Origin: Lepidodermella squamata
Lineage: Eukaryota; Animalia; Gastrotricha
NCBI GenBank assembly: GCA_047495785.1
Contig: JBLDXI010000007.1
Span: 186,001 to 250,000 of the forward strand
DNA length: 64,000 nt
Reading direction: 5' to 3'
Position 1 is the stretch's first letter, and each line of letters opens with the position of its first letter. A program made the translations under genes and the position numbers. Shown here piece after piece: positions 33,216 through 62,072 of the stretch. The notes under the pieces are model-generated. The model saw only the letters and a list, made by a program, of their open reading frames with translations, ran no database searches and was not told the origin of the DNA.

Positions 33216-33459
33216 AAATTCACACACCTGCTGCAATTTTATGAACGCGCCTTCACCATTTCTGCTAATTTTTACACCAAAATTTACACGTAGTTGTTCG
33301 CGCGTAAATTGACGCAAAAGCCATTTGAAACCCCGTGATACTAATATATAGCGAGAATTATTCTTTTATTGATATATTACTGAAAATGCAATTTTGTTAA
33401 TAAAGTTTTTCTTGTTTTCGGTGGGGAGGGCCTTTTTGAACGTAACTTGTTGTTTAGCT

Positions 33460-33790
33460 AGACAACCCATGTAGTAAAAATCCAATGCATTTATTGGAAA
33501 AAACAAATGAAGCTTTCCTATTTTCGCATAATCTTTAAATAAAACGCAGCAGTTTGAAAAATGTTGCAAATTCAAAGGGTTTTTTTCGTTTTTTTTCCGT
33601 TTTTTTTGAAATTCTTGCGATTTCGCATGTCAGGATGGGCTTGATGCGACAGAAGATCGACAAGTTGGACGTGATTGGCGCGACACGCTTCAATGAGCGC
33701 TGTATTGGCACCCTCTCGCGCTTTACGATTCGCCGATAAGTCCAGTAGCGCTACATAATTCGCTATAGGATAGTTACGCGACAATATCGT
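33460..33790 (-). pseudogene. Degenerate partial duplicate of the ankyrin-SOCS gene
   Basis: 33618-33790 matches ~36439-36614 (ALIEACRANHVQLV.LLSHQAHPDMRNR). ~33460-33575 matches the 3' flank ~35460-35577. Confidence 0.85.
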
Positions 33791-33799
33791 GTACATTCC

Positions 33800-33990
33800 T
33801 ATACCGCGGGGTGGGTGACTGGCGTCAGAACGACCTGCCTAAAATAGAAACAAATGGCGGTTATTTTTTGCATCTCCACCAAGGCAGTCGCGTGCCGGAA
33901 AAACTGAGCGCCGGTTTTTTCTATGCATTTCGCTATTTGTTTCTATTTTAGGCAGGCCGTTCTGTCGCCTGTCGCCCACCCCGCGATATA
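33800..33990. mobile_element. MITE (~190 bp, ~60-bp TIRs, TA-flanked)
   Basis: tataccgcggggtgggtgac..cctgcctaaaatagaaacaaat versus atttgtttctattttaggcagg..gtcgcccaccccgcgatata. Confidence 0.85.
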
Positions 33991-39701: not shown

Positions 39702-42700
39702 TCACGGATTTTGCAGGCAATTTCCGTCAAAATGGTTTTCAACCCGCGTTTCAGGACGGTTGAAGCCGCGGTAGAGAAGGCGCATCTCAGGGCTTGTGCA
39801 TCGATCAGCTTGATGTCCTCGACCGCCGCAGTTTTGACAGACCCGGAAAACTGGCGGTACCGATACTTGTGAGGCCTTCGACTCGGCCGTTTCATTATTA
39901 ACATATCGAATTGACATTTTTCGCAAGACTCTATCCCATAAAAAACGGCCACGCTATATAATTTCGAAAAAATATTTAAAAATTTTAAAAATTAAAATGT
40001 CCCACCCCTAGGCAAGTATTCCGCAGGTATTGCGACAGCAAATGCTCGAGAACCAGCAAAACCATGCATATTGAAATTCCGAAAAAGAGAAGCACAAAAG
40101 CCGATGTGAAGTTCATGACGCCAAGTTGGTAGCTTTTCTGCAGGTCCTGCTTTTTATACCGCTGGCAATCGCCAGTCAGCCAAAAGTCTGTCAACTGCTG
40201 AATGAACCCGTTATGCTGGTAGTCGATGATGTATTTATCGAAAATTTGTGTCCATTTCGAGCCTTTCGGGAAGCCGAGGGCATAGCCAGTGGTTGCGTAC
40301 CATTTGCCGACGATTTTCAGCTTGCATTGCTTATCTCGGCTGCTTTTGTACTCGAGAACTTTCGCGTCGTAAATAAACGCGTCCAGAGAGCCGTTTTTCA
40401 CCGCTGATACGCCATCGTCGACATTGCTTTTGTTGAACTGGCGCATGTATTCAAACATATCGGGATAGTTTTGCTTCAGGAAGGTCTCAGTGGCTCCGTG
40501 GCTGATAGTAGCGAATCGCCAAGGTGGGTTCTTGGTGTAGGGATTTTTTATTCTCGAGTCTTCCAAGCCAGAAAAATCGTGAAAATCCTCCTTCGTTATC
40601 ATGAAAACCGCCTGAAAATTAATATGTTGTATTCATGTATCGAATTATTTATATTGTTAATGTTTGAACAATCATATTCATCTTTAATACAGTTTTTAGC
40701 AAACCAATGATTTTTGGGTGGGTTTAGGGGTTGGGATTAGGTTCAGGACTTGGTTCAGGGTTCAGGGAACAGGGTTCAGGGCTTGGTTTGGGTTCAGGTT
40801 AGGTATAGGGATCAGGTTTCAGGATTCAGGTTAGGGTTAGGGAACAAGGTTCAGGGTTCGCGATCAGGGTTCAGGTTAGGCTTAGGGAATAGGATTCAGG
40901 GTTCAGGGTTCAGGGTTATGGGTATGGGTTATAGGTCAGGGTTATGAGTTGGGGTTAGGTTGAGTTTCGGGATTTGAACAAGTTGATTTTAGGGCTCTCG
41001 CACTTCCCGTTCGAAAAAATCAGAAGTATAGTAAACAAATGATGACTCACCAGATTAGCCATGTAAGAGGAAGAGAAAATGACGCAGAACATGCCCCAGA
41101 CGCACGTCATAAGTTTGGCGCTGAGGCTCTTAGGAATTTCGACCCTAACTACGGCTTTGAACAGCATTGACCAAGATAGCCAAAGCGAGGAAAACGGCGA
41201 AAACCGGCAAGCTGGTTACAGAATTTTTTCAACTTAAAATTCCGACCAGCTCGCTGAAAACTTACGATTTTGAGCAGTGTTATCGTTGCCTCTGAAAAGA
41301 GTGCTCGAATATTCGAATAGGAAAGTCGATACGGCACAAATATTGATTAGACCTGCCAAAATCGCAAACCAGGTTTCAGGCGAGAAAGGCTCTGAAATTC
41401 AAAATTTTAGCAAAATTCTTTATATTTCGTCGAAATTAAACCTAGAAAAGCCGTGGCGGAAGTCGCAACCTCTCTAACGCTAACCAACATGGTGATACCC
41501 TGCAGATAAAACAGGTTAAATTGCTAAAAATTGATAGAAACCAAACGAACCGTTTCGAGAAACGGAACCGAAAACTCAATGACTTGGCTTCGATCGCGGT
41601 TGATTTTCAAGCTAGTTATCGCGAGTTCAGCCTCCCCTGACATCAAAGCCTTTACTAAGCCATTCCACTGACCATCCTGCCGAAAAATCTTATATCCATA
41701 CAGAAAAAGGTTGGATTTCACAACAAATTGACTTTCTCTAGACCTTTTAACAAATTATAGAAATAATTAAGAAAATTTACATTGTGAGTACTGCCCCATT
41801 TTCGATCGTTTACTTCTGAAAGCTGAAACCGAAAACCGATATCTTCAGACAGCCTTCGCAGCAAGTCGACACAGAAACCGATACAGCAAATCCATGAATC
41901 ATTAGAATTATGCCCGATAGCTCGCATTTTATCGTTGACTTCAAGCGGTTTTATGCTGGAACCTTTCAAATTCGTATGCTCCAAATGGGCTAGTGGTGAC
42001 AGCTGGCACGGTATAGCAGTTCGAGAGCAAGACTTGGTGACAGGATTAACTGGCTCGTAGATAATATAAGGCGGCTCTTGCAGGGTTACAACTTTTATCG
42101 TTTCATAATCGTTGTCGACAACATCTTCCATAGCATGAAATACCTCCGTGGTTTTGAGGACTAGACCCGTTTTTCGTGTCCATTCGCCGAATGTTGTCCA
42201 CCTTCGCCGCGCGTCCAGGTTCAGTAGTAAGACTTTGTTCAACTCCATCGTGCCGCCATCGTCGAATTCTACGGAATCGCTTACATTACCACGCATGATA
42301 GGAACCTTACTCGTTCGAATGAACCTATTAAAAAAGGTCAGAATTTTAAGATGGGAAATTTGAGGTCAATTTACTCGATAAAGTCATCTTTTGGCGCCCA
42401 GTCGGTTTTGAGACGGTCATCGCAGACACTAGCCGGTGAAAGCCTTTCAGTAGCAGCATACGGCTCCTGAGCCAGCCTCCTAATAGCACTCGACCATATG
42501 TGAGCCGCAGCTTTAAGCGCGCCTAATTGCGCCTCGTAACTCGTATCATAGGTGACTACAACAGTCCCAGGTGCGAATGCCATGGCCTGCGATTTTAGAT
42601 CGTCATCGCCCAAGACTGGCTTGGCACATACCCAAGAGTACTCGGATGACGTCATACCCAGAGTTCGCGCCTCGGCGAAAATCTCGCTCGCCTCTTCTTT

Positions 42701-44121
42701 TGAAGTATACAGAACTATGAATCGTGTCTTGTCGTTATCTCGGATTGCTATCAGTTTCGAACGAACTATCTCGCGCCAATTCGAGCCTAGCTTCACGGTT
42801 CTCATAAGCCGAGACCCGGCGTAGTGTTGGACATGGATGTAGTTCGACGTTCGAGGGCTAGCCTCGCGGGTCTCCCGTTCAGACAGGCGATGCATTTCGT
42901 CGACGAAAGCTTCGTGCCCCGGTGTTTGGAGAGATTCGATCAGGCTGAATTTTTGGAATGAATGGGTTTTCAGGAATTCGTATAGAGCCTGAGCTTGGCT
43001 TCGAATTGAAGGAGCCAGTAGAAAATGAGGCGACCTGTCTAGCACAAGGTTGTCAGATTCGAGTTCGTATGCATTCGTGCTCCATTGAATAACCGGCATA
43101 CCAGCTATATAGGAATAGAGTAGGCTTTTAGCAAATTGAAGTTGATACCATTTCGAAATAAAATTGGAGACAAACATTCTTGCTCGGAAAGTCTTACCGG
43201 GATTGGCCCAAAATTGTGGACACCCTAAGTTGAAAGCTTAGAGCTTTGGTCCTTAATATCCATTTGTGCACAACTGATAAAAATTGGCAAATTTCACTGA
43301 AAAATATCTTTATTTTTGGGCTTTCCAGCGGTACCAAATTTGCCAGTACTTTCATTAATCATTGATTTAAAAAAATCAAAATGAGCTTCTAAATTCTCAA
43401 AAATTTACCTGCCGATCGAGATTCCTCGGGCCAGGGCTTGGCAATTTTCTTCCATTTTTAGACAATTTTTTTCAAATTGGATAACGTGTTTTTCCCAGAG
43501 TTAAGACCCAGGACCCATTACGTTATTTTGGGAAAGTTCATTGCTGGAAACCTGAATTTAGGCTGTCCAATTGGCACCCTATTTCTCTATAGGTCAATAA
43601 AAGGACACATAGTGGAATTTCAGATAATTTATAACTTCATGTGGTCCATTGATCTCACCTGCATTGGCCAGCATTGTTATGAAATTGGCCAAATGAGTTC
43701 CAGCCGATCCTTGAATCGAGCTATCTGCCAAGACAAAAACCGCATTGATGCCTTCAGCGGCCGGCGAGCAGAAGACATCGCGAACAGTCGAGTGTAAACT
43801 AGCGCCAGTAGCGTAAACGGGATTGACCTGCAATCTGTAAACAACGCGGCGATTAGGAACTCGCCGCCCATACATGCCAGCCCGTGTCGATGTCACATTG
43901 AAAAAATGTCGCAGTTGATCGCGAACTTGGCTCGACGTCAAATTACGAGTAGGCAGGACAAAGGCTATTGTCACCGTTTCAACGGTATACAGACCTCGCG
44001 CGACCGAACTCAAATCAGCATCGGATCCTAGATCGACGACTTTTTCAGCGGAATTTTGCGTTGAAATCGCGTCGAAAAAGGTGATCGCGACAATCACAAC
44101 TGCTATTGACAGCCTGGCCAT
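39702..44121 (-). CDS. NR2-D: GluN2/NMR-2-like iGluR subunit with C-terminal CCHC knuckle
   Basis: Signal peptide and ATD; VVTLQEPPY, CCIGFCVDLL, WNGLV, SLKINRDRS..FSVPFLET, WSMLFKAVV, SYMANL|AVFMI, AFIYDA, TGYALGFPKGS; last exon CQNCGGRGHQADRC. Confidence 0.9.
40715..40962 (+). repeat. Degenerate telomere-like G-rich repeat (TTAGGG/TTCAGGG) in an NR2-D intron
   Basis: About 250 bp of ggttcagg/ggttaggg units. Confidence 0.85.
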
Positions 44122-44550
44122 AAATTAATAGGAAAATATTTCGCGTAAATCATGTAAAGTGACAACAATGCAGTGATGTTTGTGAGCTGTCAGCCACCTT
44201 ATTAGCGCTGCTATTCACTTATTTTTTGCCTAATAATTCGCCGAAGGGTGGCATTTAGCGGCTTTGTCAAAAGTTGTTATTTGCTGAGAGATATAACAAC
44301 GCGCAGCGTCAAATGTATACTCAATAATAATAGAATTGTCGAGTTGGTGCATCGGATTTTTATTTTCAGTTGAGCAACAATTTCCGTATATATGTAAAAA
44401 TATACTCGAAGGCCAGCGTTCGGTTTCGATAAACATGCGGTCAAGCAAACAGTCGGGGCTGATACTTTTTATTTACGAAAGCCGGATACAATAAATATGA
44501 GACAATAATATATTTATATCGCTCTTTTGTCCGAGGTCAAAATGCAGTGA

Positions 44551-47500
44551 TTAGTCGCCGATAATATGCTTCATATGCGGACTGGTGCAGTCTATCGAGT
44601 TATGACCAATGCCGTTGCAATTCGAACAAACGATAGGCTCGGCTTCAACGCCGTCTACAGTTATGCAACGATTTTCTTTTGGCATGTAGATGAAGAATAA
44701 ATTGTCCAGCATCGCATCGATTTTTCGCTCCAGCTTTCTCTTGGCCTGAAAATTGTAAATAAAATTTGAATATTCCACCTTAATTAGTGCTAAAATTGCT
44801 CATCGCTTGCGCATTTTCACCTTTCCGGGGGTTCACCTTTTAAAAAATTCTTAGAAAATTTAAATTGTTTAAAAATCCTTCGCTTAAAAGCAAAATTAAT
44901 CACCTGATTGGGTGTGCCGTAATATGGGACAGAAATAAATATGAGGCTCATCCTTAGTAATAAAGTTTCCGAAATATTTCTATAGTTATAATTCCGACTT
45001 ACACATATAGACCCATTTTGTACGATTTGATTAAATATTTTGAGGGAATTAAAGTTCAATATTTAATGCGCTTACACCCTTAATAAAATCGATATTTATA
45101 CCAAATCTGCTTTGTTAGCCGGGAATCGTTTACGGCAAGGCAGCAGGAACAAAGCCGCCGCGAAGCCGAGTGTAAGAAGAATGAAGACAGACTGGATGTT
45201 TCGAATGCCGACTTGTTGACTTTTAACTTCATTCACCTGTGTATCACACTTCCCCGACATCCAATATCCACGTAAACTGTCGATATAACCTTTCGCCTGG
45301 TATTCGATGAGTAATTTGTCGAAAGTGTGGTGCCACAGGGAGCCCTGTTGGAACCCGATCCCGTAACCGGTGTTAGCGTGAACCTTTCCAGTCAAACGCA
45401 GCGAGCAATCTTTATCCCGTTTTGCTTTGTAAGCCAGGGCAGATGCGTCGTAAATAAAAGCGTCCAGCAATCTATTTTTACATAATATTAATAAGAAAAA
45501 ATTAATTTCAGAGATTTACCCGGTCTTAAGCGCAATCATAGCATCGTCAACTGATGTTTGGCTGTTGCCTTTAATCGATTCGTAAACCACTGGATAGTTG
45601 AATCTCAGGTATGCCTCAGTTGCCCCAGAGCTCAAAGTCGCGAACCGCCACGGTGGGCTTTTACTATGCGGATTTAGAATCCTCATATCGTCCAAACCAC
45701 CGAATTCGAAATAGTCATCCTTTGTTATCATGAAAACCGCCTGAAAATAAATTATGAAAAAAACGCACTGATATCGAATTAACTTATACGAACCAAATTA
45801 GCTGTGTAGGATGACGTGAAAATCAGGCAGAACATTGCCCAAACCCATGTCATTAATCTAGCCGCTATGCTATGCTTAGGTAATTCGACTGGAACAGTTG
45901 CCTTGAGCAGCATGGTATAGACACACCATAGGGCAGCGGAAAATGACAAGTTATGACCTGAAACGGATTAAAGAATTACTTGATTCCGCAAAAACTATTG
46001 CTAATACCTGGTTTCCATTTAGGGCTATTTCGAAACACAACGTAATCAAATCCGAAAATTAGACACCCTGAAATTAAGGAGACGCAGAAAATTCCGAGCC
46101 AGGCGTTCATCGAGAACGGCTCCAATATTGCGGTTGTTGAAGCTGTTGCATCTTTAACCGATACTGCCATAGTAATACCCTAAAATTTACGGAAAATTAT
46201 CGCCCAGTCGTTTTTTGAAAAGCTTACAGTTTCGAGAATAGGAATGCTGAAATCAACGACTTCACTCCGCTCCTTGTTGATTTTCAACGAAGTCACGACA
46301 ATGTCAGCCTGGTCGACAATTAGAGATCTCACTAGGCCGTTCCATTGGCCTGTTTTATCGGCCGCGCCCCATTTTCGATCAGGAACTTCGAACAGCTCGA
46401 TTTTGAAGTTCAAATCTTTCGCAAGTCGCAGTAAGACATCCATAAATAGCCCAGTCGCACATTGAATGTCAGCCCCTGGTATAATAGGACTGGTGTATTT
46501 ATCGGAATCTCTCTTATCGTAGTTGGCCCAGGAGAAGTTAACCGGCGCCATGCGGATAGGAATCTGCCCGATTTCGCATATTGTCTCACCACTATCCGAA
46601 CGGCTTTTCGGCTCACGGTACATGACAAAGGGCGGCTCGCTTAGCGTGGCTACGCGGAATTTAAGCGATGTTTTCACGTGTTTGTCATGCTCGTCAGCTT
46701 CGTGTATAAAGCCGGTTGTTCTATTCCAAGATCCGAAATGGCGCCATTTCCGGTCTTCGGCAAATTCGAGAAACACAATTTGCTCGTGCAATGCTCCGTC
46801 TTTAACACTCTCAGCCATGCTTTGATCTATAAGGCTTCAAATCACCAACAAATGTGATTAAAATAAACATTAAAATTAATTAATTAAAATGAAAATAAAA
46901 CAAAAATATTTAAACATTCCCGAATGTGCACAAATGTTTTTAATCGCCAAAAATCAGATAAAATTCCTAAAATCGCTAAAATTTGCAGATAAATCGGAAT
47001 CCATCTTTGAATGATATTTAAATTTTTTTCTGAAATAGAATTTATTTTTAATCCTCATAAAATCGGTTTTGTCTAAATTTACCCCACGTTACGGTATTTT
47101 TTAAATTTTATTTCTCAATTTTAAATATTATACCTGTTTAGGAATTCGCCGTTAACCCAAGGTTTCAGAACCATATCATGGCACACATTTCTCGGCGCCG
47201 CATTTAGCTGGGTAATATTGGCAAATTTTATGAATTTTTGCAGCGTCCTCATGTAGATGTCCGCACCAGCCTCGATTGCCTCAACTTGCGCCTCCACCGA
47301 CATGTTATAGGTGACCGCAATCGAACCAGGCGGTAGATTGGTTAGGCTTTTACCAAGATTATCGCCGCCTAAGACTGGCCTCATGCACAGCCACTTGAAC
47401 TGGGCCGATGTCATGCCTAACGAGTTGGCTTCTCGCAATATCTCATTCGCTAAAAACTCGCCAGAGAAAACGACTACAACATGACTTTTCGCTGCCGAAC

Positions 47501-48442
47501 CACGGATGAGAAGCAAATCCGAGCGAAGAGAAGACCGCCAATCTGAGGGTAGAATCCGCGCCTGGAGACGACGTTTATCCAGCTCGATGTGATCGTCAAC
47601 AATCGGCCCGTCCGTTCGACCGTGCTCCATGGCTAATAGGATCCGAACAAAAACGTCATGACCTGGTTGAGTTTCAGAGGCGATGATGCTGAATCGGCTT
47701 TTCGGATGCTTATCCAAGTAGGAAATTACAGCCTACAGAAAATTGTGAGATATTATTCTTCGAAATTTTTCCTTACTTGAGCATAACTTTGAATAGAAGG
47801 CGCGTGGATAAAGTGCGGAAGCCTGTTCATAGTCAATGAAGAACTGCCCAGCTCTGAAATTGATGAGCTCCATGCTAGCGTTGGAATTCCTATATTAGTC
47901 GCCTGAAAATGGACGATATTCGCGAGTGAATTCGCGCTCTCGCCCTGAACGGCCTTGTTAACCATAAGAAACACCGCATTAACACCCCATTCGGCTGCAT
48001 CGACTGGGCAAAACATGCGGCGAATAATTTGAACTAAGGATAAGTTATCAGGCTGGACAGGATTTATCTGCATCCGGAAGATGACTGTCTCACGACTTGG
48101 GTGCTGAGCGATCCCCACGTGACTCTGACTCAATAACCCATCCAATTTCCGTTGAAGGTAGTCAGGAAAATAGCCTTTTGGCGGTAATAGATATGAGATT
48201 GTCAGGGGGACTACAGGCACCTTTTGCGGGTAGATTTTAACCGGCTCAGAGACATTTTTGTCCTTTCTTCGCGGGTATTTGATCAAACGGCGACTTGACG
48301 GCGATGAATTAGAACGGGGCGGGGATGTACTTTGAGCCGAATTCCGATTGAAGAGGAGCTTAATCGAACCATCCCAAACTGCGGGGTGAAATGACTGAAC
48401 AAGGTTAACCCCCAGAAAAATTTGGAAAATTAGAAATTTCAT
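44551..48442 (-). CDS. NR2-C: GluN2-like iGluR subunit with C-terminal CCHC knuckle
   Basis: VATLSEPPF, KWG..GQWNGLV, SLKINKERSEVVDFSIP, YTMLLKATV, SYTANL|AVFMI, AFIYDA, TGYGIGF; last exon CSNCNGIGHNSIDC. Confidence 0.9.
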
Positions 48443-48552
48443 AGTAAAAAATAGAGTTTAATTTATTATTTTAGCTCTCGGCAAAACATATTGGTATCAA
48501 GTTACAAAAGCATTCTAGTTTACAGCTTTCGATATCAAATTGCGTTCTCGTA

Positions 48553-51500
48553 TTAATTATTCGTAGTCGAAATGACTAGCAGCGATCGGCGCATTTTCTC
48601 AGAGCTTGTCTCGTAGCGGTTGACGTTAAGGCCGCGAGACGTTGCTAAGGGTGATTGGGACATTATTGGGCTAGTGCATTGCGCGCGTCGATGGCCGATG
48701 CCGTCGCAATTCGCGCATCGAATGACATTTGGCCCAGGCGCTGCTGTTATCATGCGATCGCCGGCCCATGTTGAAGAGACGTAGCCATTTTCCAGCAGCC
48801 GCTTGATTTTTTCATCGACAGTCAGAGTCGCTACCTTAAAAATTAAAGACTAATCAATAAAAATTAAAAGAATTTCGGCTGAAAAAATTGACCTTATTAT
48901 TCTTTTTCAAACACTCGTATTGCAAAAATTTGATAAATCCACCAATTAACAGGCCAATTAGCAAAAGGATAAACGCCGGTAACATATCACTGCATCGAAG
49001 CTGGGCAGACCTGAACTCGTTAATTCGTGAACTATTACAATCACTACCCCCGAAAAACCACTGTTCTTCCAAGTTTTTCAGAAATCCTGAAACGAAACGA
49101 GATAAATTAAGAAATAATTATTTTTTAAATATTTTACCGTTATTTCGATAGTTGATTATCGCATCATCAAATACCGATAGCCAATCAGAGTCCTTCGGCA
49201 GCCCGAAACTGTAGCTAAACAAGCCGTGGGAATTAGGACCGATCTGTAGCATGCACTCTGAATCTTTCATTGCTTTGAATTTCAATATCGCCTCATCGTA
49301 TATAAATGCATCGTATCCCCTAAAAACGAGTTAATACATCAATTTTCTTGAGTATTCATTCTCTGAAATGTAACCTGTTTAGTAAGGACTCGATAGCACC
49401 ATCAACAGTGGTATTTGATAGGAATTCTATGTTTGGTAGGACATGATCAAAGCCGTTTCGTATGAAAGATAAGATGTCATCCTCAGCTAGGCTTGCGAGC
49501 CGATACCTCGGGTTCCTAGAGAAGGGATTCGCCAGTTTTTGATCATCAAGCCCGCTGAATTTTGCTTCCTCTCCAGCGTTTGATTCCGAAATGAGAAATA
49601 CAGCTAGATTAGCCGCGTAAAGGCAGGAGAAGATTGTACAACAAATAGCGACTACGGATCTGACTAGATTGACGGAATTTGATCGAGAACAACGGGTCGA
49701 TAGGCAAAGCTCAGAGCTGAAGATGCGATTTGGTTTAAATTTAGAGCCGGCCAAGTTTTCGAAAAGGCAAACGGAAAAACTAGCGAATATCAGCGTGACG
49801 AAGGTAGCAAACCACGTTTCCAACGAAAAAGGCTCTAAACAGCGCGATTATTTGAATTATCAAGGAATTATCGAAAATTATACCTAAGAGCAATTTCCAC
49901 TTGGGTTTCCTTTCAGAAACGTAAGCCAATGTTAGGCCTGTTTGAAGAACTGGAGTTGATATCTCGATGAAATCTGACTTGTACGCCAGGCTTGATTTCA
50001 GCGGCGCCAAAATTACGTCTGCTTCGCGGGAAACCACTTCATCCCACATCTTGTTGGCAAACTTTTAAAATTTCAAAATTAATTTAAATTATACTAACAG
50101 TAGTATTGTTTGTAAACAGCGACCTGAAATGAAAAAAAGTTGAGAATTATAGAAAAATAATTTTTTGGAGCAACCTCTCCTCTTTCGGTACTTCGTAAAA
50201 GTGTAGCTGGAAACCGATGTCTCTTGAGAGCCGCGAGATCAAATCGATAAAAAATCCGCGGATGCATGAAACACTTCTAGCCGGTAGAATAGGACTGTCG
50301 AAACAGGGAAAAGTTCCCAAAGGACATTTCTCAGCAGCATTTTTCGGGTCGAAAACGACAAAAGGCGCCGCGTGCCAGGTTCCAATTCGCAAATATCGGT
50401 TTCTTAACTGGCTTTCTATCGCTGATTTCTTTGAAATTTTCAAGCCCGAGAATTTATTCCAACTTGCAATAGACGTCCATTCTAGCGATTTGCTGAGCTC
50501 GAAGAATGTCACATTCTCGCCTGGACTGATTTCTTCCCCCGACAAATCGACCTCTGCCTTGGTATTGCGGAGAATTCGCTCGAGAACTTCGCCATAAGCC
50601 CATCCAGCGCCAAGGCGATCCCTGCCACAAAGTGACTTGGTCTTCGGCGAAATGTCATTCGGTGTCATATCGTAGAGCCTGGCGAACTTCTGCATGGCTT
50701 TAAACCAGAGACGAACTGCGTATCTCGCCGTTATCATTTGCGTTTCCATCCAATGATCGAAGGTGATAACGGTGGTACCAGGTGTGGCATTCACCAACCG
50801 CTCAAATTTACCATCTGGAGAGACAGCAATTACTTGAATTCTGCGATTATTTGCTATCCCCAAGTTTCGAATTTCCGTGAAGATTGAATCCAACATTACG
50901 TCACTGCTAGTGAGGAGAATTACTGCCTAAATACAAAAAAAATCAGTTATAGTTTTAATTTTGCACTTGCTTTGAACCTGTAAATTAGTGAATGAAGCAT
51001 TCCGGACGGTTAGCAGTTCCGATTTAACGACGGACTTCCAATTTGATCCCGGTAGTGTTCGACGACGAGGGGTAACCCATTCGCTCTGCTTTTTCATCGT
51101 CTCAAAGCTGAATTCGTTGAATCCCGGGGTACCTTCCATTCCTATCATGGTGATTTGACGTTTCCTGGGCCTTGAGTCGAGAAATGCAATCATTGCATTC
51201 GCCAACACTTTGGCTGACGGGAACAGCGAAACCTCGCCGGGCAAATGTTGTTCAAAGGCCGAGAAGCTCCATAATAGGTAAGGAATTTTCACGGAACTTG
51301 CAATAAACTTTAATAGATTCACCAAATCAGGACTTGTTTGGTCGTCCGAAATGATGACTAGCGCATTCAGACCAGTCGCCTGAGTCGAACAAAACACGTC
51401 ATTTACAGCCTCGTTAGCACCTGTCGACGCTAGGAAGACCGGGTTCAGTTGGAACCTGAAAATTATCGGCCGGTCGTTGCTAGCTCGATTAGGGGTGGAG

Positions 51501-51724
51501 ATGAACGTTTCGTGCTTTGAATTTATCCATTGAAATTGCGGATAGTTAAGGAGGTTTCGACTAGGTAGAACCACGCTTAGGGTGACTGGTTGCACGAGGA
51601 CAGCCCGAGGTACCTTGACGTTAAGACTTATCGTCCCGACGACTTTGGCAAAACAAAGCAGGCTAATAATCGATATCATTATTGTCAGTATTGTCCAGAA
51701 AAAAATAGTTTTATATTGGCTCAT
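48553..51724 (-). CDS. NR2-B: highly divergent GluN2-like subunit with CCHC knuckle and degenerate pore loop
   Basis: IGTWHAAPF, CIRGFFIDLI, LYAANLAVF, AFIYDE (exon ~49140-49320), M4; last exon CANCDGIGHRRAQC. Confidence 0.82.
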
Positions 51725-51864
51725 CAGCCCTCATCTATCAGTTCGCGACTGTATCAAATATCGCAGTGGCCATAACAACAAGTGACCCATATTATTTTCA
51801 CTGAGTTAGTTCAAAAGCCCAATATTTTGTAAATACGCATTGGTGCAATTTATTTTAGGTCATG

Positions 51865-54800
51865 TTAGGTTTGGTATTCTTTGATGGCTTTCAACAAATT
51901 CATAGGCGGACTGGCGCATTTTCTGAACGTGTGACCTCGACCGCCGCAATTGGCGCACACTAGGTAATTAAGGCTGACAGTCGCTAGGTCAAATCGTGGC
52001 TTTTTCGAGTCACTGTTCGTTGTAATCACGTATCTTCGCATCATTTGCTGCTTCAATTGAGCCCGGATTCCAGACTATAGAAATTATAACAAAATTAACG
52101 AAAAATCCTGTTTAATTTGGTTATGTCCCGTAAGCGCAACCTCAGGAGCGTAACCTCGCTTGTGCGTAACCATTTGTGTGCGCAACCGATGTGCGCGACC
52201 GACGTGCGCAACTATTGGGCGAAACCTGCTGTGTGTAAATAAATAAGTCAAAACACGAGGTAATTCCCATTAGTTCAACCGCGCAAATGTGCACATTCAC
52301 GGAATTTTCAACCAGCCGTGTATTTGTCTAACCAATTCGCCCAACTCTGCGAACACAAATTTAAAAAAATGTATTTATTCAAAATTTTAAAAAATTGCGT
52401 GATAAACGGAGCTAAAGTTTTGATCACCATCGTAAACCGTTTGCTAGCAAACATTTATTAATTCAACTGTTGACAACATGATCCACCTTAACATAAATAG
52501 CACCCCGGCTGCAGCTGTGAGGACGAAGAATCACAGCTACTAAGCGGACGCGGCAGGCCTCTGAAGACTCAAAATGAATCAATCTCGCAATCAAGATGGA
52601 TTTTGAAATGTGGTTTTTAGCTGTAGACAGGCAGCGAGCATTTTTTTAAATTACTGTAAGGCCACGCTATTAGGCTCTCTTGACGAAGTCGATGCTCGCG
52701 TTAATATTAATGGAATTACTTTTATGATCCACCTTAATAACAATAAAAAGTAATCACGGATGAAGTATCTCCTGAACGCGGAAAAGCAACGTCCTTTTGG
52801 AGTTCAAATCTCAACGGGCTATACTATAAAGCAAACAAGCCGCTGCGCGCACTCACACGTAGAGTCACCCTCGCCATCCTCGTCGCCTCTCCACGACTCC
52901 CCATGGTCTAGCGTCTAGCTTACCGCCACTTGAAATAATTCATCTTCCTTGATCACACCTGCGATGTTTGCGCACAATAATCGCACTGATACAAAAGCGT
53001 ACCTTTTATTGCAGGCTCATAAAAATTATTGCAGGTTCCTCCCTTCACCCCAGTACTTCGCCTAATGCAAAATTTCCAATAACTAGTTCGACTTTGAATC
53101 CGCTCGCATTTATCTGATTTGAGGGATTCAATATTTTCGATGGAAATTTCCTCCGGCAACAAGCTAATTTCTGACATTAATTTAAGATATTAAAATGTGA
53201 GCGAAGAAAATTTCTCCTTTGGTTTCAAAAGGCTGAATACACTCAGCCTTTCCTGGAATTATCTCTTCGCAAAAATAAGACTTTGGTGGACACACTAAAG
53301 AGCTGAACTTTGGAGCGCACGCTAATTGTTCAATTGATCGTAGCTACGACTCCGGGATTTTTTGCAAGAATGCAAGCACGATTACTGAAGGTTTTCCACT
53401 TAGCTGCCATGCTCTCTACTTCGCGGATGAGTTAGATCATAGCCGATCATGTCAAATGACTTGAACTAGAGGTGAAATTTCGTCAGCGGCGTTTCAAAAT
53501 TAATGGTAATTTTAATAAACTTTGGCATACAGCTGTAACATAAACGTTTTTGACAAGGAAAAAAATTACCGAAATTTTTTATAATTCATAGGGGTTTATC
53601 ACCCTAGCATATAGGGTATACATTTTCTCCCTGTTTTATGGTCGAAATAAATTTTCACCGTCTTCTAACAATTTTACGGCATAAATACAAAAGGTTACGC
53701 ACACAGGTTGCGCACAGCAAAAGTTACGCACAGAAAGTTACGCACGCGCGGTTGCGCTCTTGAGGTTGCGCTTACGGGAATTGACCGTTTAATTTTAGAC
53801 TTACCAGCCCCATGAATCTCACGATATATTTAGAAAAAAATGTTTCGAGTATCAAGATGAACATGCTGAGACAAAGGCCGAGAAGAAGCAGAACAAAGGC
53901 CGATGTGAAGTTGAGAATGCCAAGTTGGAACGATTTGTTAGACTCCTGTTTCCTGTGCTTCTTACAAGCTCCACTGAGCCAAAATTCGCTGAGCTGTTGC
54001 AGAAACGAATTGTGTTGATAATCAATCACGTATTTATCGAAAACTGGCAGCCACTTTGAGCCTTTCGGAAAGCCAATGCCGTACCCGGTCATCGAGTACC
54101 ACTTGCCAACTGTTGTCAGACGGCACTCCTTATCCCGGCTTGATTTGTAGTCCAAAACAGTTGCGTCGTAGATGAATGCATCGAGGGTACCGTTTTTTAC
54201 AGCTTCAATGCCGGTTTGAGCCGAACTCTGGTTGAACTGGCGCATGTATTCGAACATGTCCAGGTAATTAGTGCGCATGAAGGCCTCCGTAGCGCCCGAT
54301 GATAGAGTGCCGAAGCGAAATGGCGGGTTTTTCGAGAAAGGATTCTGAAGCTTTTTAAGTTGAAATTTTAGAAAAGGAAAAATCTGTAAAACCTGTAAGC
54401 TTACCCGTGGGTCTTCTAGTCCTGTAAAGTCGTAAAATTCATCTTTCGTGATCATGAAAACAGCCTGGAAATTCATCAAATTATTTCGAGAAAATTGAAA
54501 GTCGAGAGAAACTAACAAGATTAGCCATGTATGAAGAAGCGAAAATCACGCAAAACATGCCCCAAATTGCGATTAGAAACTTTGCGGCAAATGTTTTCGG
54601 AACTTGAACTCGAACGGCGGCCTTGAAAAGCATGGCCCATACCAACCAAAGTGACGAAAATAATGGATGGACAGCTGGAGTAAAATTAATATTTTTTCCA
54701 AATTTGCAGGCATTTTAATTAATTATACATGATTTTCTGCTGGTCATTTGCTGGATTTCGTAGTTATGGTCTGTTCCCCAGTTCTCACTCTTCACAGCGA

Positions 54801-57597
54801 TGTATTCGAAGACAAACGAAGATACGACTACGGCGTTGACACATCCGATCATGATTGCAAGCCAAGCCATCATAGAAAAAGGCTCAAGAATCGCCATTGC
54901 CGAGATGGCTCCTTGTTTTATCGCTACAACCATTGTTATACCCGTCTCAAGGAACGGTATGCCGAAATCGATGGCCTCACTCCGGTCTTTGTTAATTTTC
55001 AACGACGTCATCACAACATCGGCCTCACCGTCGATAAGAGCCCGAACTAGACCGTTCCATTCACCGCTAAATTTATCCTTGACACCCCTGAAATGAACCA
55101 CCTTAATTCTGCGTGAAAAATGCCAGGAAACTGACCATTTTTGATCTTTGACTTCGAATAGGTGGAATTTAAATCCGATGTCGTTGGATAAACGGATGAG
55201 CAAGTCGATACATAGGCCGGAACAACAAATTTTCGAACCGTTGGCTACGTGATCAGTTTCTTCTGGCAAATTGTACTCGCCGAAATACGATGCATTAAGT
55301 TGTCTGAAAAAAAATTAAATATTCATACATCGGAAAAATGGAACAAAATTGAAAGCTTTTTCAACAATCAAATTCACACACGTCAATCCGCCACAAAAAA
55401 AGCAAAATTGACCTCATTTCCTTGATAATCAATCCAAGACTTTCTGTTTCAGAAATATCCCTTGACCTAACACGGATGACATAGGGTCGTGAAAATGCTA
55501 AAAAATCGATAAAAAAATAATATAAAAAATACTTACTCCTCGTAACTTTCTTTGATTTTGTTAGACCGTGAAACTTCGCAAGGTAAGGTTCCTCTTGGAC
55601 ATGACCCCGTGTGATCGGCCGAACCGTAAATAACATAAGGCGGCTCTTCCAAGGTGGCAATACGTAGCGTTGCACTGTCAATCTGACTAGTCTTCATTTG
55701 AACAATCTGCGTCGCATTAGCAACCAGTCCGTAGTTAGGCGACCACTCGCCGAATTTTACCCACTGCCTTATCGGGTTTAAATACGCCAAAATGAGGCGC
55801 TCTGTCGATTGGAAATGATCGTCGTCGCCCTTGGCAAGTTCGGCCTTGGCCTGGGCCAGTTCATCGGCGAATGCGTCATGATAAGCCCACGGTTCTGGGT
55901 TCATAACTTTGTCGCAAAACGGCTCGGGAGCTATAGCGTCGAGAATTATCTGGGGATGCGATGTCTCTTCGTCATCGAGTAACGTCTGGATGAATCGCCT
56001 CACGGCAACAGACCAAATGTGAGTCGCACCTTTAATAAATCAAAATGACCGATTACCGATTATTATAACAATTTAGACCAGAACCCTTCCTAAATTTAGG
56101 ACTCCACTACTCAGCGGTGAGGAGACATTTAGAAAATATGATAAGCCAAAGGATTTGGGTAATTTTGGACAACAAATGTCTTTGGGCGTTTTAAAATCAG
56201 TCCAACGTCAGAAATTTAAGACGAAGGTGTGTAAAATGATTTTTTATGTTCTTACAAATTTTGGCGATTTTGCTATTTTTGCCTATTTTTGGTGATCGAA
56301 AGCATTTTTGAATTGAGTTTGACAAATAGCGGGTAATTTGGGGCGCTAATTTGCATATGGAATGACATTGTGAGCTTTCAGTTTTTATTGATCCTTGGGC
56401 CAATAAAAAAATAAAAAAAAAATGACCCAGTCCGAAATTCTCCTAAATAATCATGAAAATTCCGAAAATTTCGAAATGGCATTTTTTGGGTGAACTAATT
56501 ATTTCAGTAATACATAAAACATTTCCTGTCTCACCTTTTAGGATTTCAAGCTGAGCATCATAGGATGTATCGTATGTTACAACAATCACGCCAGGTACGA
56601 AATTGAGTAAGGGTGTATCGTTAATATCGTTATCACCAAGAGCCGGCTTGCCAACAATCCAAAGGTACTCCTCAGCAGTCATTCCGAGGGTCCTCGCCTC
56701 GCTAAACACGTCATTAGCTTCCTCGGCTCGTGCGTACAAAACTATGGCTCGAGTTTTAGCAGAGTCGCGAATGTAAAGTAATTCCTCACGAACCATCGAC
56801 CGCCAATCACGGCCGAGCTTCGCCACATGGATCTAAAAATAAATTATAAGTAACAAATAGATTTTGTCGAAGAATTCTTATACTAGTCTCGAAGCTGAGT
56901 GGTGGCGATGTAGGTCGTAGGTCGTCTGAGACGATCGCCTCTCCTTATCAGCCAGTTCGAAAAGCTCCCTCGCAAACGCATCATGACCCGGCGTAAGCTC
57001 AGTCCCAATTAAACTGAATTTCTGCCACGGTTGCGATTTTAGAAAGTCGAAAATCGCCGTAGCTTGCTCTTGAATTCGCGGCGCTAACAACAGCCGATTT
57101 TGTTCGTTATCATGCTCGAGCTCGAATGACGACGAACTCCATGCGAGCGTAGGAATTCCGACATTTTTTGCGAGGCTGGTTAAAAAATTAGCCATCCTCG
57201 TGCCATCGTCGCCCTGTTCGCGCTTATCAGTAATAATCAGAATCGCATTAAGGCCTTTCGCAGCTCTTGAGCAAAACACGTTTCGAACAGTTTCCTGAAC
57301 GCTCATGCCTTTAACGTAGACAGGATTAACCTGAAGCCGGTGGACTATGCCCCGATGTTCGCCGGAGTCGCTGCTGCTTTCGAATGGCAGGTAATTCGGC
57401 AAGAGACCATCGGCTAAATACTGCCGCAAATTGTTACGCGTCGACGGCTTTGTCAGGTTATGATTAGGCAGTACGAAGGCCAGAGTTGCCGTTAAAATGT
57501 GGGCTGGTATCAGTGGTTCTTGCTTCAGATTGCGTGGTTTTAGAGCAAGAGCCGAGGCGAGAAAAAAGGGCGCAAAAAATATGCTTAAAAAATCCAT
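51865..57597 (-). CDS. NR2-A: most conserved GluN2/NMR-2-like subunit with C-terminal CCHC knuckle
   Basis: IATLEEPPY, CCSGLCIDLL, SLKINKDRSEAIDFGIPFLETG, WLVWAMLFKAAV, SYMANL|AVFMITK, AFIYDATVLDY, WYSMTGYGIGFPKGS; last exon CANCGGRGHTFRKC. Confidence 0.92.
52127..53778. mobile_element. 1.65-kb TIR DNA transposon in the last intron of NR2-A
   Basis: TIR cccgtaagcgcaacctcaggagcgtaacc versus ggttgcgctcttgaggttgcgcttacggg; subterminal gtgcg(t/c)aacc repeats at both ends; no intact transposase ORF and no clear TSD. Confidence 0.85.
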
Positions 57598-57991: not shown

Positions 57992-59022
57992 TTATTCGAA
58001 AGGCCGTCTTTGACGCCACTCGAACGCCCCGTAGCCCAGGTCGATTTCGGCCGGCTTCTTCTCGTAAAGGCTTTTATCATCAACACCCTCCTCGCCATCA
58101 GGGCTTAAACCAGGTCGCGGGTCAATAACAGTATCAAATTTTGACGACTTGAAATGCACGCCTTGAAATTACAAAAAAACTAAATGAGTCTCATATAAAG
58201 TTGACCTCTAACCTCCTTTAATTGCGGGGTTATCCGAAATAAGTGTGACATAAAGCGCTGGTGTCCGCATTACAAGTAGACCCTCACTCGGATTCAATAC
58301 AACTGAATAAAAAAATTAGAATTAAATTAATAAAAAATCAATTGAGCTTACATCCATTAGCAGCGAGATCCTCGGCATCTTTTAGGAAAACAAGAGTATT
58401 TCCATTCAACCGGCGTATCCTTTCGCTTTCTGTCACGTTGACAGTCGATCTAATAACAGCCTTGTTATTTTTCATTGTAGCCCGGTCATAGAAAAATCCG
58501 ATGACATCGCCAGCTTTCACTTCCATCGGTTTAGGCAACTGCCAATGCGCCCAGTCGCTGAACATGGCCGGTAGAAAAATCAGGTAGGTTTGCTCGACCA
58601 TTGTTATTGTCGTCGGGTCATTTCGCCGAAATAACGCTAAATGCAGGCCAGATACAACAGGCGCGGCTGATAGAAAGTGAAAGTGCGTAAGTTTCGCGTC
58701 GCATTCAATTTCCATGTCCAGAAATATTGATAGGCCCATGTCTAAGCTTGGATAACGCGTTGGCGGCCCCGTCAACTCTGAAGGCATGTGCTTAATTTCG
58801 AACATGCACGACACAGCATCGTCTATGTAACCTCGGCAGGTACAAATCAAAACCGCTAACTAGTGAATAAAGATGTATTTTATTATAATTCTAAGAGCAA
58901 AATGATTTTTCACCGAGATTAGAACTGCCGCCGTAGTGATAGGCATCGGTTGTAGAATTAACTAAAAAAATTGGCTGTATTTCCTGGTTTCGAGGACAAA
59001 CAGGTAGAAAACTAAGCCTCAT
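57992..59022 (-). CDS. K5: secreted GLHLAxFRP-domain protein lacking the Kunitz domain
   Basis: Proposed MRLSFLP|LAVLICTCRG start; FLDMEIECDA, GLHLALFRR, GDVIGFFYD, RTPALYV; ends ..WRQRRPFE* without Cys. Confidence 0.72.
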
Positions 59023-61256: not shown

Positions 61257-62072
61257 CAATCAATAAAATTCGCAAAATTATGATGATATATGCCAATAAG
61301 CATTCATAAATAACCAATATTTTAACATTTCTTGAATGAGACCTAAAATATATCCGTTAAAAATAAAGAATAATACTTGAGGAAATTAAGTGATGATTTT
61401 TCAAATTTTTCAAAAATTCAAGTTTTGAAATTGACAAGAGTAAAGAATTGTTGTTATTTTAATGTTAGTTTTGTTTGCATGCAATGCGATGAAGATTTTT
61501 AATAGCGGTTGAATAAATGGCACGTCCCAACGCGGCGCGGGCTCTCAAAAAGCGCGCGCATTAATTACTCGCCCGTAATTAACGTATAGGAACGCTAGAA
61601 GACGCCAATAAACATGGGTTAGTTAGCTGTATACATCATCAACTGCGCGCGAGACACTTGAGTGACCTGATTCATATTATGCCGTGGCGTGCGGCGGTTA
61701 AACTATATTAATAAAAATAATTGTAATTACTCGACGATGCAATTGCGCAAGCGATCAGCTAATTATGAATTTTGATCGTATAATACATTCAAAAATAATG
61801 TCTTCGGAGATTTACGCTATTATTTCGCGGATTGCAACAATTTTTAACGCGCCATTATTTGCCATAAAAAAGTGACACCGCTTTTGATGTTACCTCTCTA
61901 TGCGCGAGAAAACTTTACCGCAACACCGACAATCACTATGTTTGTTCTAACAACGATACAAATAAAACATTTAACAGCGTCGTGTTATTTCTGAATTCAT
62001 GAATGCCAAAAGACAAAATTGGCGCAAAGAATGCACCTTTAGTCTTCACCCTCAACAGGAACAATAGGTCTT

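What the first reader, a model, noticed from the sequence alone, without database searches (positions are those of the whole stretch)
39702..52075. Four NMDA-receptor (GluN2-like) paralogs each end in a Gag-type CCHC zinc knuckle
Seen: the last exon of every paralog splices in phase 0 onto the M4 exon and encodes CX2CX4HX4C followed by (T/A)SP.M. The motifs are CQNCGGRGHQADRC (~39795-39842), CSNCNGIGHNSIDC (~44585-44630), CANCDGIGHRRAQC (~48672-48718) and CANCGGRGHTFRKC (~51914-51958). The rest of each tail is unalignable, and none ends in an ESDV-type PDZ ligand. The knuckle survives even in the most degenerate copy, which implies selection. Known: this motif is the nucleocapsid/Lin28/CNBP-type knuckle that binds single-stranded nucleic acid, and iGluR C-tails are cytoplasmic. 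I know of no iGluR with this domain. Inference: an ion channel that tethers RNA or uses a Zn/redox switch, possibly from a captured retroelement gag fragment.
Basis: partly seen in the sequence, partly recalled or inferred. Interest (0 to 1): 0.92.

Follow-up and report, generated by a model that had tools for sequence, protein, structure and literature searches.

The report
Glutamate receptors ending in zinc knuckles
Four neighbouring NMDA-type glutamate receptor genes of an unidentified invertebrate end in a small zinc-knuckle domain otherwise known from RNA-binding and retroviral proteins. The combination is conserved, appears undescribed, and has no known function yet.

Summary
The window holds exactly four CX2CX4HX4C motifs (about 0.1 expected). 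All are on the minus strand, each in the last exon of one of four tandem GluN2-derived receptor genes: A 57597-51865, B 51724-48553, C 48442-44551, D 44121-39702. Each tail exon follows the M4 exon across a canonical phase-0 GT-AG intron and is followed by AATAAA.

A related organism, recovered from metagenome contigs, has four more genes of the same clade with this tail. Three share the phase-0 intron. In the fourth, M4 and knuckle lie in one uninterrupted ORF, so the knuckle is receptor coding sequence.

C, C, G, G, H and C are invariant in all eight tails although synonymous sites are saturated. The eight genes form one clade inside protostome GluN2. Its sister gene and 107 other NMDA-type tails lack the knuckle and mostly end in PDZ ligands. 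The clade also has Lys at the pore QRN site. No paper found describes such a receptor.

Function is untested. I favour a zinc-folded cytoplasmic docking module that replaces the PDZ-ligand tail. RNA tethering is possible, but the base-stacking aromatic residues are absent. Gag capture has no support. The contig is not human. No transcript data were available.

The parts
51865..57597 (-). Gene A. GluN2-derived iGluR with 9 coding exons and a stop-free model of about 1000 aa. Exons: 57597-56884, 56832-56535, 56029-55537, 55303-55136, 55087-54729, 54674-54517, 54464-54405, 54350-53805, 52074-51868, plus stop.
   Evidence: Homology-guided GT-AG model. Signal-peptide-like start MDFLSIFF. Ortholog is L005 gene 1 (57% identity).
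53805..54350 (-). Gene A exon holding S2 and M4. It ends ..IVRFMGL at a CTG|gtaagt donor, phase 0.
52075..53804 (-). Gene A intron between the M4 exon and the knuckle exon, 1730 nt. It is almost filled by an element with ~120-nt terminal inverted repeats (52119-52237 and 53682-53786).
51865..52074 (-). Gene A terminal exon: 39-aa spacer, knuckle CANCGGRGHTFRKC (51957-51916), ASPPM, short end, stop TAA at 51867-51865. AATAAA lies at 51854-51849.
48553..51724 (-). Gene B. The most divergent copy, with a stop-free model of about 924 aa. Exons: 51724-50978, 50926-50192, 50061-49884, 49834-49375, 49319-49138, 49086-48893, 48834-48556, plus stop. Some junctions are approximate. The ligand-binding Arg and the pore loop are degenerate.
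48553..48834 (-). Gene B terminal exon, after the 58-nt phase-0 intron 48892-48835. Knuckle CANCDGIGHRRAQC (48717-48676), then TSPIM and a 40-aa end. AATAAA lies at 48467-48462.
44551..48442 (-). Gene C. Stop-free model of about 996 aa. Exons: 48442-47777, 47732-47134, 46834-46228, 46179-46008, 45957-45794, 45740-45520, 45471-45102, 44745-44554, plus stop.
   Evidence: Ortholog is L005 gene 2 (P0034, 45% identity).
44551..44745 (-). Gene C terminal exon, after the 356-nt phase-0 intron 45101-44746. Knuckle CSNCNGIGHNSIDC (44628-44587), then TSPHM. AATAAA lies at 44473-44468. An alternative acceptor at 44778 is less likely by homology to the ortholog.
39702..44121 (-). Gene D. Stop-free model of about 1020 aa. 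Exons: 44121-43659, 43104-42375, 42324-41781, 41676-41551, 41499-41442, 41391-41266, 41211-41051, 40611-40006, 39953-39705, plus stop.
   Evidence: Ortholog is L008 (P0185, 64% identity).
39702..39953 (-). Gene D terminal exon, after the 52-nt phase-0 intron 40005-39954. Spacer with LWDRVLRK helix motif, knuckle CQNCGGRGHQADRC (39839-39798), TSPEM, 30-aa end, stop TGA at 39704-39702. AATAAA lies at 39619-39614.

Best explanation
What it is. The four knuckle ORFs are the genuine last coding exons of four tandemly duplicated, GluN2-derived ionotropic glutamate receptor genes. Each receptor has the usual amino-terminal domain, ligand-binding domain and M1-M4 pore. After M4, the long canonical GluN2 tail (cysteine cluster, disordered region, PDZ ligand) is replaced by a short tail. 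That tail has about 10-15 residues encoded on the M4 exon. The terminal exon then encodes a spacer of about 38 residues (predicted to start with a helix), one classical CX2CX4HX4C zinc knuckle, usually [T/S/A]-S-P-x-M, and a variable end.

Shown: the tail is an ancestral, selectively maintained character of a lineage-specific receptor subfamily. At least eight genes in two organisms carry it. The subfamily also carries Lys at the pore QRN site and the gate motif SYMANLAVF.

Inferred from iGluR topology: the tail is cytoplasmic, and the knuckle sits about 50 residues from the membrane.

Inferred from the invariant C, C, H, C and G, G residues: it folds around one Zn2+.

My committed guess, not shown: the knuckle is a compact docking module that takes over the localisation or trafficking role of the lost PDZ-ligand tail. 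It would bind a cytoplasmic partner, more probably a protein than a nucleic acid. The adjacent Ser-Pro could be a regulatory phosphorylation site.
For: - Four motifs against 0.10 expected, all at the homologous place.
- Canonical phase-0 splice sites in all four genes, and the 52-58-nt tail introns of B and D match the other short (44-55 nt) introns of these genes.
- AATAAA lies 11-86 nt after each tail stop, before the next gene's ATG.
- All four gene models are stop-free and begin with signal-peptide-like starts.
- In the relative, L001 has S2, M4 and the knuckle in one uninterrupted 265-codon ORF (P0002).
- L005 gene 1, L005 gene 2 and L008 have the same phase-0 intron followed by a knuckle exon.
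- The eight tails align with invariant C, C, G, G, H, C. These residues use different synonymous codons. pS is 0.77-0.91 (saturated) while pN in the tails is 0.34-0.56.
- Orthologous spacers are significantly similar.
- The eight genes form one clade, with SH-aLRT 99-100 on columns that exclude the tail. The clade is nested in protostome GluN2.
- The sister gene P0192 (L009) has a canonical-type tail and no knuckle anywhere in its 21 kb locus.
- Of 108 fetched NMDA-type proteins with at least 40 aa after M4, only P0002 has a knuckle. Most end in TVL, SDV, SEV or SVL.
- None of 68 metagenome loci of relatives has one on the coding strand.
- A profile of the tails matches solved CCHC knuckles and nothing else: Air2, HIV-1 NC, TUT4, SF1, Lin28, dArc1.
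- AlphaFold gives helix 2-20, a disordered linker, and its best confidence over the knuckle.
- C-terminal knuckles are known to act as protein docking sites. The CLIP-170 knuckle binds p150Glued (PMC2172020), and the Air2 knuckles sit in the Trf4 complex 3nyb (entry listed; their role is established knowledge).
Against: - No transcript evidence could be obtained, so use of the tail exon in this species is inferred from splice sites, conservation and the intron-less relative.
- Three of the four window knuckles score below Pfam's gathering cut-off, and only 6 of 8 tails reach E <= 0.1.
- The AlphaFold model has low confidence overall (mean pLDDT 59.7).
- Nothing identifies a partner, so the docking role is a guess by analogy.
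- No conserved C-terminal residue or CLIP-type motif exists.
- The relative's four contigs are assumed, not proven, to come from one organism. The organisms themselves are unidentified.
Short tail-only ORFs in other species could therefore have been missed.
Confidence: 0.8

Rival explanations
1. RNA or ssDNA tether. The cytoplasmic knuckle binds single-stranded nucleic acid, so the channel anchors specific RNAs at the membrane or synapse.
For: The motif is the classical nucleic-acid-binding knuckle. Profile matches are to HIV-1 NC, Lin28, TUT4, SF1 and Air2. Spacers and the residues between His and the last Cys are often basic.
Against: There is only a single knuckle per subunit. No aromatic residue occurs at position 2 or 3 or after the His in any of the eight, and only A has one at all (Phe, two after the His). 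The residues between the ligands are not conserved. In NC-type knuckles those positions make the base contacts (established knowledge). No RNA-related domain or motif occurs elsewhere in the tail.
Confidence: 0.2
2. Zinc or redox sensor. The Cys3His site binds and releases Zn2+, or is oxidised, to modulate gating or trafficking from the cytoplasmic side.
For: Strict conservation of the four ligands. Knuckle cysteines are known to be redox-sensitive (general knowledge).
Against: The two invariant glycines and the exact spacing point to a stable structural fold rather than a labile site. About 50 residues including a predicted disordered linker separate it from M4, which suits allosteric coupling to the gate poorly.
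Confidence: 0.07
3. The knuckle ORFs are not part of the receptor genes. They would be separate small genes, 5' exons of the next gene in the array, or inert remnants of a retroelement gag copied along with each duplication.
For: No transcript data. The tail ORFs lie only 113-432 nt upstream of the next gene's ATG.
Against: - One relative has M4 and knuckle in a single ORF.
- D's knuckle has no iGluR gene downstream, and A has no knuckle upstream.
- In the relative, L001's knuckle (in the single M4-knuckle ORF) is followed by unrelated genes, and L008's contig ends about 150 nt after its tail exon.
- A stop and AATAAA follow each tail.
- Conservation is at the protein level with saturated synonymous sites.
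- There are no Gag, capsid or pol matches.
- All eight CCHC motifs in about 126 kb of these two genomes sit at iGluR tails.
Confidence: 0.03
4. Origin only: the tail exon was captured from a retroelement gag (nucleocapsid) at the base of the clade and then domesticated.
For: The motif type is common in Gag NC. The tail is a discrete terminal exon entered in phase 0.
Against: Similarity is limited to about 18 residues that are equally typical of cellular proteins. Air2 is the top match. No flanking Gag-like sequence exists in any of the eight tails. The single origin is old, so any trace would have been erased. The hypothesis cannot be decided with these data.
Confidence: 0.12

Closest known systems
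Canonical protostome GluN2 (NMDA receptor subunit 2), e.g. Capitella P0187, Pinctada P0186, flatworm P0005/P0236
   Same: Same domain order: ANF_receptor amino-terminal domain, S1/S2 ligand-binding domain, M1-M4 pore. The GluN2-type FIYD motif is present. The clade nests inside protostome GluN2 in two trees.
   Different: The tail is 70-110 aa and holds a zinc knuckle, instead of a long tail ending in a PDZ ligand (TVL, SDV and similar). There is Lys rather than Gly, Ser or Asn at the pore QRN site, and SYMANLAVF rather than SYTANLAAF.
Retroviral / Ty3-type nucleocapsid zinc knuckle (HIV-1 NC, PDB 1aaf, 1a1t)
   Same: Exact CX2CX4HX4C spacing, Asn at position 3 in 7 of 8, and Gly before His. 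The profile E-value is 4e-5.
   Different: There is one knuckle, not two. The base-stacking aromatic residue is absent. There is no Gag or capsid context. The knuckle is tethered to a membrane channel.
Yeast Air2 (TRAMP complex) zinc knuckles, PDB 2lli and 3nyb
   Same: Best solved-structure matches to the tail profile (E = 3e-6 and 3e-5). Knuckle 5 reads CYNCGGKGH, close to the CxNCGGRGH found here.
   Different: Air2 is a soluble nuclear protein with five knuckles. Some of them contact the Trf4 protein rather than RNA (established knowledge), which shows that this fold can serve as a protein docking site.
CLIP-170 C-terminal zinc knuckles
   Same: A CCHC knuckle near the C-terminus of a cytoplasmic tail, used for protein-protein docking to the CAP-Gly domain of p150Glued (PMC2172020).
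   Different: There is no conserved C-terminal aromatic or acidic motif here, and no match to the CLIP1 knuckle family at E <= 0.1-1. This is an analogy only.
GluN2A N-to-K pore mutation and Q/R-edited GluA2
   Same: A positive charge at the tip of the pore loop. PMC12226733 summarises that an N-to-K change at the GluN2A Q/R/N site strongly reduces Ca2+ permeation and voltage-dependent block.
   Different: Here the Lys is the natural, conserved state of a whole receptor clade. Its effect was not measured.

Membership tests
Ionotropic glutamate receptor, NMDA GluN2 subfamily | Amino-terminal domain (ANF_receptor) plus S1/S2 ligand-binding domain | tested here: met
   Pfam ANF_receptor E = 4.5e-13 on a D exon. 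Lig_chan-Glu_bd E = 1.8e-22 on a C exon. tblastn coverage of all domains in A, C and D.
Ionotropic glutamate receptor, NMDA GluN2 subfamily | Pore with M1, re-entrant M2, M3 gate motif SYTANLAAF, and M4 | tested here: met
   All segments are present in A, C and D. The gate reads SYMANLAVF or SYTANLAVF. In B the M2 region is degenerate.
Ionotropic glutamate receptor, NMDA GluN2 subfamily | Phylogenetic placement inside GluN2, apart from GluN1 and GluN3 | tested here: met
   Two maximum-likelihood trees (quick search, SH-aLRT support). The clade sits with protostome GluN2 at 96-100 support, with GluN1 and GluN3 outside.
Ionotropic glutamate receptor, NMDA GluN2 subfamily | Arg of S1 that binds the agonist alpha-carboxylate | tested here: met
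   Present in the ..INKDRSE.. context in A, C and D, and replaced in B (read by eye against the known GluN2 motif).
Ionotropic glutamate receptor, NMDA GluN2 subfamily | Asn at the QRN site (vertebrate GluN2; Mg2+ block and Ca2+ permeation) | tested here: not met
   Lys in A, C, D, A', D' and E', and in C' by eye. Canonical protostome GluN2 has Gly or Ser, so Asn is not universal in protostomes either.
Ionotropic glutamate receptor, NMDA GluN2 subfamily | Long cytoplasmic tail ending in a class I PDZ ligand | tested here: not met
   Tails end ..EYQT..STTNN..HIIGD and ..CLQNP. 65 of 108 fetched relatives end in TVL, SDV, SEV, SVL or TSL.
Ionotropic glutamate receptor, NMDA GluN2 subfamily | Glutamate-gated current with a GluN1 partner | not testable with these tools
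   Needs heterologous expression and electrophysiology.
Classical CCHC zinc knuckle (Pfam zf-CCHC, PF00098) | CX2CX4HX4C spacing with Gly before His | tested here: met
   All four window tails and all four relatives. C, C, G, G, H, C are invariant.
Classical CCHC zinc knuckle (Pfam zf-CCHC, PF00098) | Score at or above Pfam's gathering cut-off (20.8 bits) | tested here: inconclusive
   D scores 22.2 and passes. C 19.2, B 19.0 and A 15.8 do not. 6 of 8 tails match at E <= 0.1. The profile of the eight tails matches solved knuckles down to E = 3e-6.
Classical CCHC zinc knuckle (Pfam zf-CCHC, PF00098) | Binds one Zn2+ | not testable with these tools
   Needs metal analysis of recombinant tail.
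Nucleic-acid-binding knuckle of the NC / Lin28 / CNBP type | Aromatic residue after the first Cys (or after His) that stacks on an unpaired base | tested here: not met
   Position 2 is A, A, S, Q, T, R, K, K. The position after His is T, R, N, Q, I, S, T, I.
Retroelement Gag | Capsid or other Gag sequence next to the knuckle, and retroelement genes or LTRs nearby | tested here: not met
   No Gag, capsid or retrotransposon family matches any tail. PDB matches cover only the knuckle. The only repeat nearby is a TIR element inside A's intron.
CLIP-170-type C-terminal knuckle | Knuckle followed by a conserved acidic-aromatic C-terminus that binds CAP-Gly domains | tested here: not met
   The C-termini of the eight tails share nothing. 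There is no CLIP1 knuckle family match.

The most novel reading that the evidence does not exclude
A neurotransmitter-gated ion channel that directly binds RNA (or another single-stranded nucleic acid) through a zinc knuckle on its cytoplasmic tail. This would physically couple receptor position at the membrane or synapse to mRNA anchoring or local translation. It would occur in a receptor subfamily that also has a lysine in its selectivity filter, and so probably conducts little calcium.
Probability: 0.18. Interest if true: 0.9.

Novelty: new variant of a known kind. Interest (0 to 1): 0.66.

Why it matters
Glutamate receptor tails are where channels connect to the cell's scaffolding, trafficking and signalling machinery. 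In all well-studied NMDA receptors that link runs through a long disordered tail and a PDZ ligand. Here a whole receptor subfamily has swapped that tail for a folded zinc-binding module of a type never reported on an ion channel, and selection has kept it through several gene duplications and a species split.

If the knuckle docks a protein, it defines a new way of anchoring or sorting glutamate receptors. If it binds RNA, it would be the first direct link between a ligand-gated channel and RNA. The clade's lysine at the pore's selectivity site and its altered gate motif suggest unusual channel properties, so these genes are attractive for expression studies. The finding also gives a clean natural example of domain replacement at the C-terminus of a receptor by a single terminal exon.

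Tried and rejected
- Large-database search with the intron-less 912-aa relative P0034 as a whole found only itself. Words were drawn from the fast-evolving amino-terminal domain.
- The search with P0002 and the region search with P0119 found only canonical GluN2 proteins and the relatives' own fragments. No further knuckle-bearing protein turned up.
Short tail-only ORFs of other species may have been missed.
- A JGI metagenome scan with an S2-M4 alignment gave 68 loci, the closest at 44-49% identity. None has a knuckle on the coding strand.
- Dimorphilus P0220 looked close (63% in S1), but it is only 25-33% identical in the amino-terminal domain. Its contig is not on record.
- An Rfam scan of the window and three loci for taxon-specific RNAs found nothing.
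- A literature search for the metagenome sample accession found nothing.
- The organism could be placed only as protostome, on the spiralian side of the GluN2 tree, outside the annelid, mollusc and flatworm GluN2 group.
- Formal dN/dS could not be computed because synonymous sites are saturated.
- The AlphaFold model of the tail was too uncertain for a fold search, so none was run.
- My first automatic junction picker favoured deleting real exon sequence and was replaced. B's first intron was corrected by eye.
- I considered and rejected the knuckle ORF as a 5' exon of the next gene, and as a retroelement remnant (see rivals).

Full report
**Nature of the contig.** The window is eukaryotic and not human. 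Its genes have many 44-58 nt GT-AG introns, and it carries a tandem array of protostome-type NMDA receptor genes.

**Observation.** A six-frame scan finds exactly four CX2CX4HX4C motifs in 64 kb. All are on the minus strand, at 51957-51916, 48717-48676, 44628-44587 and 39839-39798. Simulated sequences of the same composition give 0.10 per window.

Each motif lies in an open frame immediately 3' of the M4 exon of one of four tandem iGluR genes: A 57597-51865, B 51724-48553, C 48442-44551 and D 44121-39702. I modelled these by homology to intron-poor relatives and canonical splice sites. All four models are free of stops, run 924-1020 aa and start with signal-peptide-like segments.

In each gene a donor in phase 0 follows M4 by 10-15 codons, and an acceptor in phase 0 opens the knuckle frame. 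The introns are 1730, 58, 356 and 52 nt. The long one in A is almost filled by an element bounded by ~120-nt inverted repeats.

A stop and an AATAAA 11-86 nt further on follow each knuckle exon, ahead of the next gene's ATG. Pfam zf-CCHC matches all four, though only D exceeds the curated cut-off.

**Is the knuckle part of the receptor?** No transcript data were reachable, so I looked for relatives. An exhaustive HMMER search with D's S2-M4 exon returned 150 representatives. One of them, P0002 (59% identical), carries a knuckle.

P0002 is a single uninterrupted 265-codon ORF on a metagenome contig (L001). It runs from S2 through M4 into CKNCGGRGHISTVC. In that gene no splicing is needed to join channel and knuckle.

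Three further genes come from the same metagenome samples:
- L005 gene 1, the ortholog of A
- L005 gene 2 (P0034), the ortholog of C
- L008 (P0185), the ortholog of D

Each has a phase-0 intron at the same place after M4, followed by a knuckle exon. Across about 126 kb of these two genomes, all eight CCHC motifs are iGluR tails.

The alternative that the ORFs are separate genes or 5' exons of the next gene fails on several counts. D's knuckle has no receptor gene after it. A has none before it. L001's knuckle is followed by unrelated genes.

**Selection.** The eight tails align with C, C, G, G, H, C invariant. Those residues are written with different synonymous codons. Between orthologs the proportion of synonymous differences is 0.77-0.91, which is saturated. 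Non-synonymous differences are 0.34-0.56 in the tails and 0.17 in the S2-M4 exon. The tail therefore evolves faster than the channel core but well below neutrality.

The pre-knuckle spacers of orthologs are significantly similar (z = 5.3-8.0). Those of the window's paralogs are mostly not. Spacer length is nearly fixed at 35-39 aa.

The knuckle also persists in B, which has lost the agonist-binding Arg and a recognisable pore loop yet keeps a stop-free reading frame of about 924 codons.

**What the genes are.** On columns that exclude the tail, the eight genes form one clade (SH-aLRT 99-100) with the orthology A/A', C/C' and D/D'. B joins C, and the L001 gene joins A. The duplications therefore predate the split of the two organisms.

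The clade's sister is another gene of the relative, P0192 on L009. It has a canonical-type tail and no knuckle anywhere in its 21 kb locus. Together they sit inside protostome GluN2, next to the annelid, mollusc and flatworm GluN2 group. The organisms could not be identified further.

The clade has two more shared peculiarities:
- Lys at the pore QRN site, where vertebrate GluN2 has Asn and canonical protostome GluN2 has Gly or Ser.
- A gate motif SYMANLAVF instead of SYTANLAAF.

A review passage in PMC12226733 notes that an Asn-to-Lys change at the GluN2A Q/R/N site severely reduces Ca2+ permeation and voltage-dependent block. These channels may therefore not behave as classical NMDA receptors.

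**How unusual is the architecture?** Of 108 fetched NMDA-type proteins that extend at least 40 aa beyond M4, only P0002 has a knuckle, even with relaxed spacing. Most end in TVL, SDV, SEV or SVL. None of 68 metagenome loci of relatives has one on the coding strand.

Full-text searches for iGluR or NMDA receptor together with zinc knuckle or CCHC found nothing relevant. Two broad iGluR phylogeny papers do not mention such a domain. This is not a complete census. The tail alone was never searched in the big protein database, and InterPro was not available.

**What the knuckle is like.** A profile of the eight tails matches solved structures only over the knuckle: yeast Air2 first, then HIV-1 nucleocapsid, TUT4, SF1, Lin28 and Drosophila Arc1. 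No Gag, capsid or CLIP-type family matches.

AlphaFold, with only eight sequences, predicts a helix at the start of the tail exon, a disordered linker, and its best confidence over the knuckle. Overall confidence is low.

None of the eight knuckles has an aromatic residue at position 2 or 3 or after the His, and the residues between the ligands vary freely. In NC-type knuckles those positions contact the bases (established knowledge). This weakens the RNA-binding reading but does not exclude it.

**Mechanism.**
- Shown: a conserved C-terminal CCHC module is encoded as part of a GluN2-derived receptor subfamily and replaces the canonical tail.
- Inferred from topology and from the invariant ligands: it is cytoplasmic and folds around one zinc ion, about 50 residues from the membrane.
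- My preferred reading, by analogy only: it is a docking module that substitutes for the lost PDZ-ligand tail in anchoring or trafficking. C-terminal knuckles dock proteins in CLIP-170 (PMC2172020) and Air2. The neighbouring Ser-Pro is a possible regulatory site.
- Rivals: RNA tethering (about 0.2), a Zn/redox switch (below 0.1), not part of the gene (about 0.03).
- Capture from a retroelement gag is an untestable origin story with these data.

**Verdict.** The domain combination appears to be new. I file it as a new variant of a known kind, a GluN2-derived iGluR subfamily with a zinc-knuckle tail. The function is open, and the first experiments are straightforward.

Noticed in passing
window 54674-54517 (A), 45957-45794 (C), 41211-41051 (D); relatives L001, L005, L008: All knuckle-tailed receptors except B have Lys at the pore QRN site (..MLFKA..). 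Their gate motif is SYMANLAVF, with Val at the 'Lurcher' alanine position, instead of SYTANLAAF. Canonical protostome GluN2 has Gly or Ser at the QRN site, and the sister gene P0192 has Asn. This suggests low Ca2+ permeability and altered gating.
   Followed up: partly
window 51724-48553 (gene B): Copy B sits on a very long branch. It lacks the agonist-binding Arg and a recognisable M2 pore loop, yet keeps a stop-free multi-exon frame and the knuckle. It is possibly a non-channel or auxiliary subunit rather than a pseudogene.
   Followed up: partly
window 52119-53786: A ~1.67 kb element bounded by ~120-nt terminal inverted repeats (52119-52237 and 53682-53786, with GCGCAACC-like subrepeats) fills the M4-to-knuckle intron of gene A. 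The same intron is 52-58 nt in B and D.
   Followed up: partly
window 51867-51724, 48555-48442, 44553-44121; L005 10542-10619: Stop-to-next-ATG gaps in the array are only 143, 113 and 432 nt, and about 77 nt between the two tandem genes of the relative. This is operon-like spacing, which might mean polycistronic transcription with trans-splicing.
   Followed up: no
window 2508-3278, 4085-4732, 58341-58859, 60642-61259 (all minus strand): Four paralogous ORFs share a motif like ..PCDG..(W/H)(N/F)F..GLHLA(V/L)FRP.. and have no Pfam match. They flank the receptor array on both sides of the window.
   Followed up: no
window about 5460-15150 (both strands) and 30201-30437 (-): At least ten small ORFs or first exons have hydrophobic N-termini and end in C-x-x-C-F-(G/R/Q/A)-V, probably just before a splice donor. 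This is a local family of secreted-looking proteins with no Pfam match.
   Followed up: no
window 38654-35593 (-) and about 33369-33838 (-): A NACHT domain ORF followed by a 535-aa ankyrin-repeat ORF lies about 1 kb downstream of gene D. A truncated, degenerate duplicate of the 3' part of the ankyrin gene lies about 2 kb further on.
   Followed up: no
window 1681-2352 (-): A Thr/Pro-rich ORF made of about seven repeats of a ..TPFPL(Q/A/E)WLFS(S/T)TT.. unit (mucin-like), overlapped by open frames on the other strand.
   Followed up: no
L009 8295-11413: The relative's sister gene to the knuckle clade (P0192) keeps a canonical-type post-M4 cysteine motif (..DKCNILAILS..) and ends ..EMVKEL. It marks the state before the tail was replaced.
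   Followed up: partly
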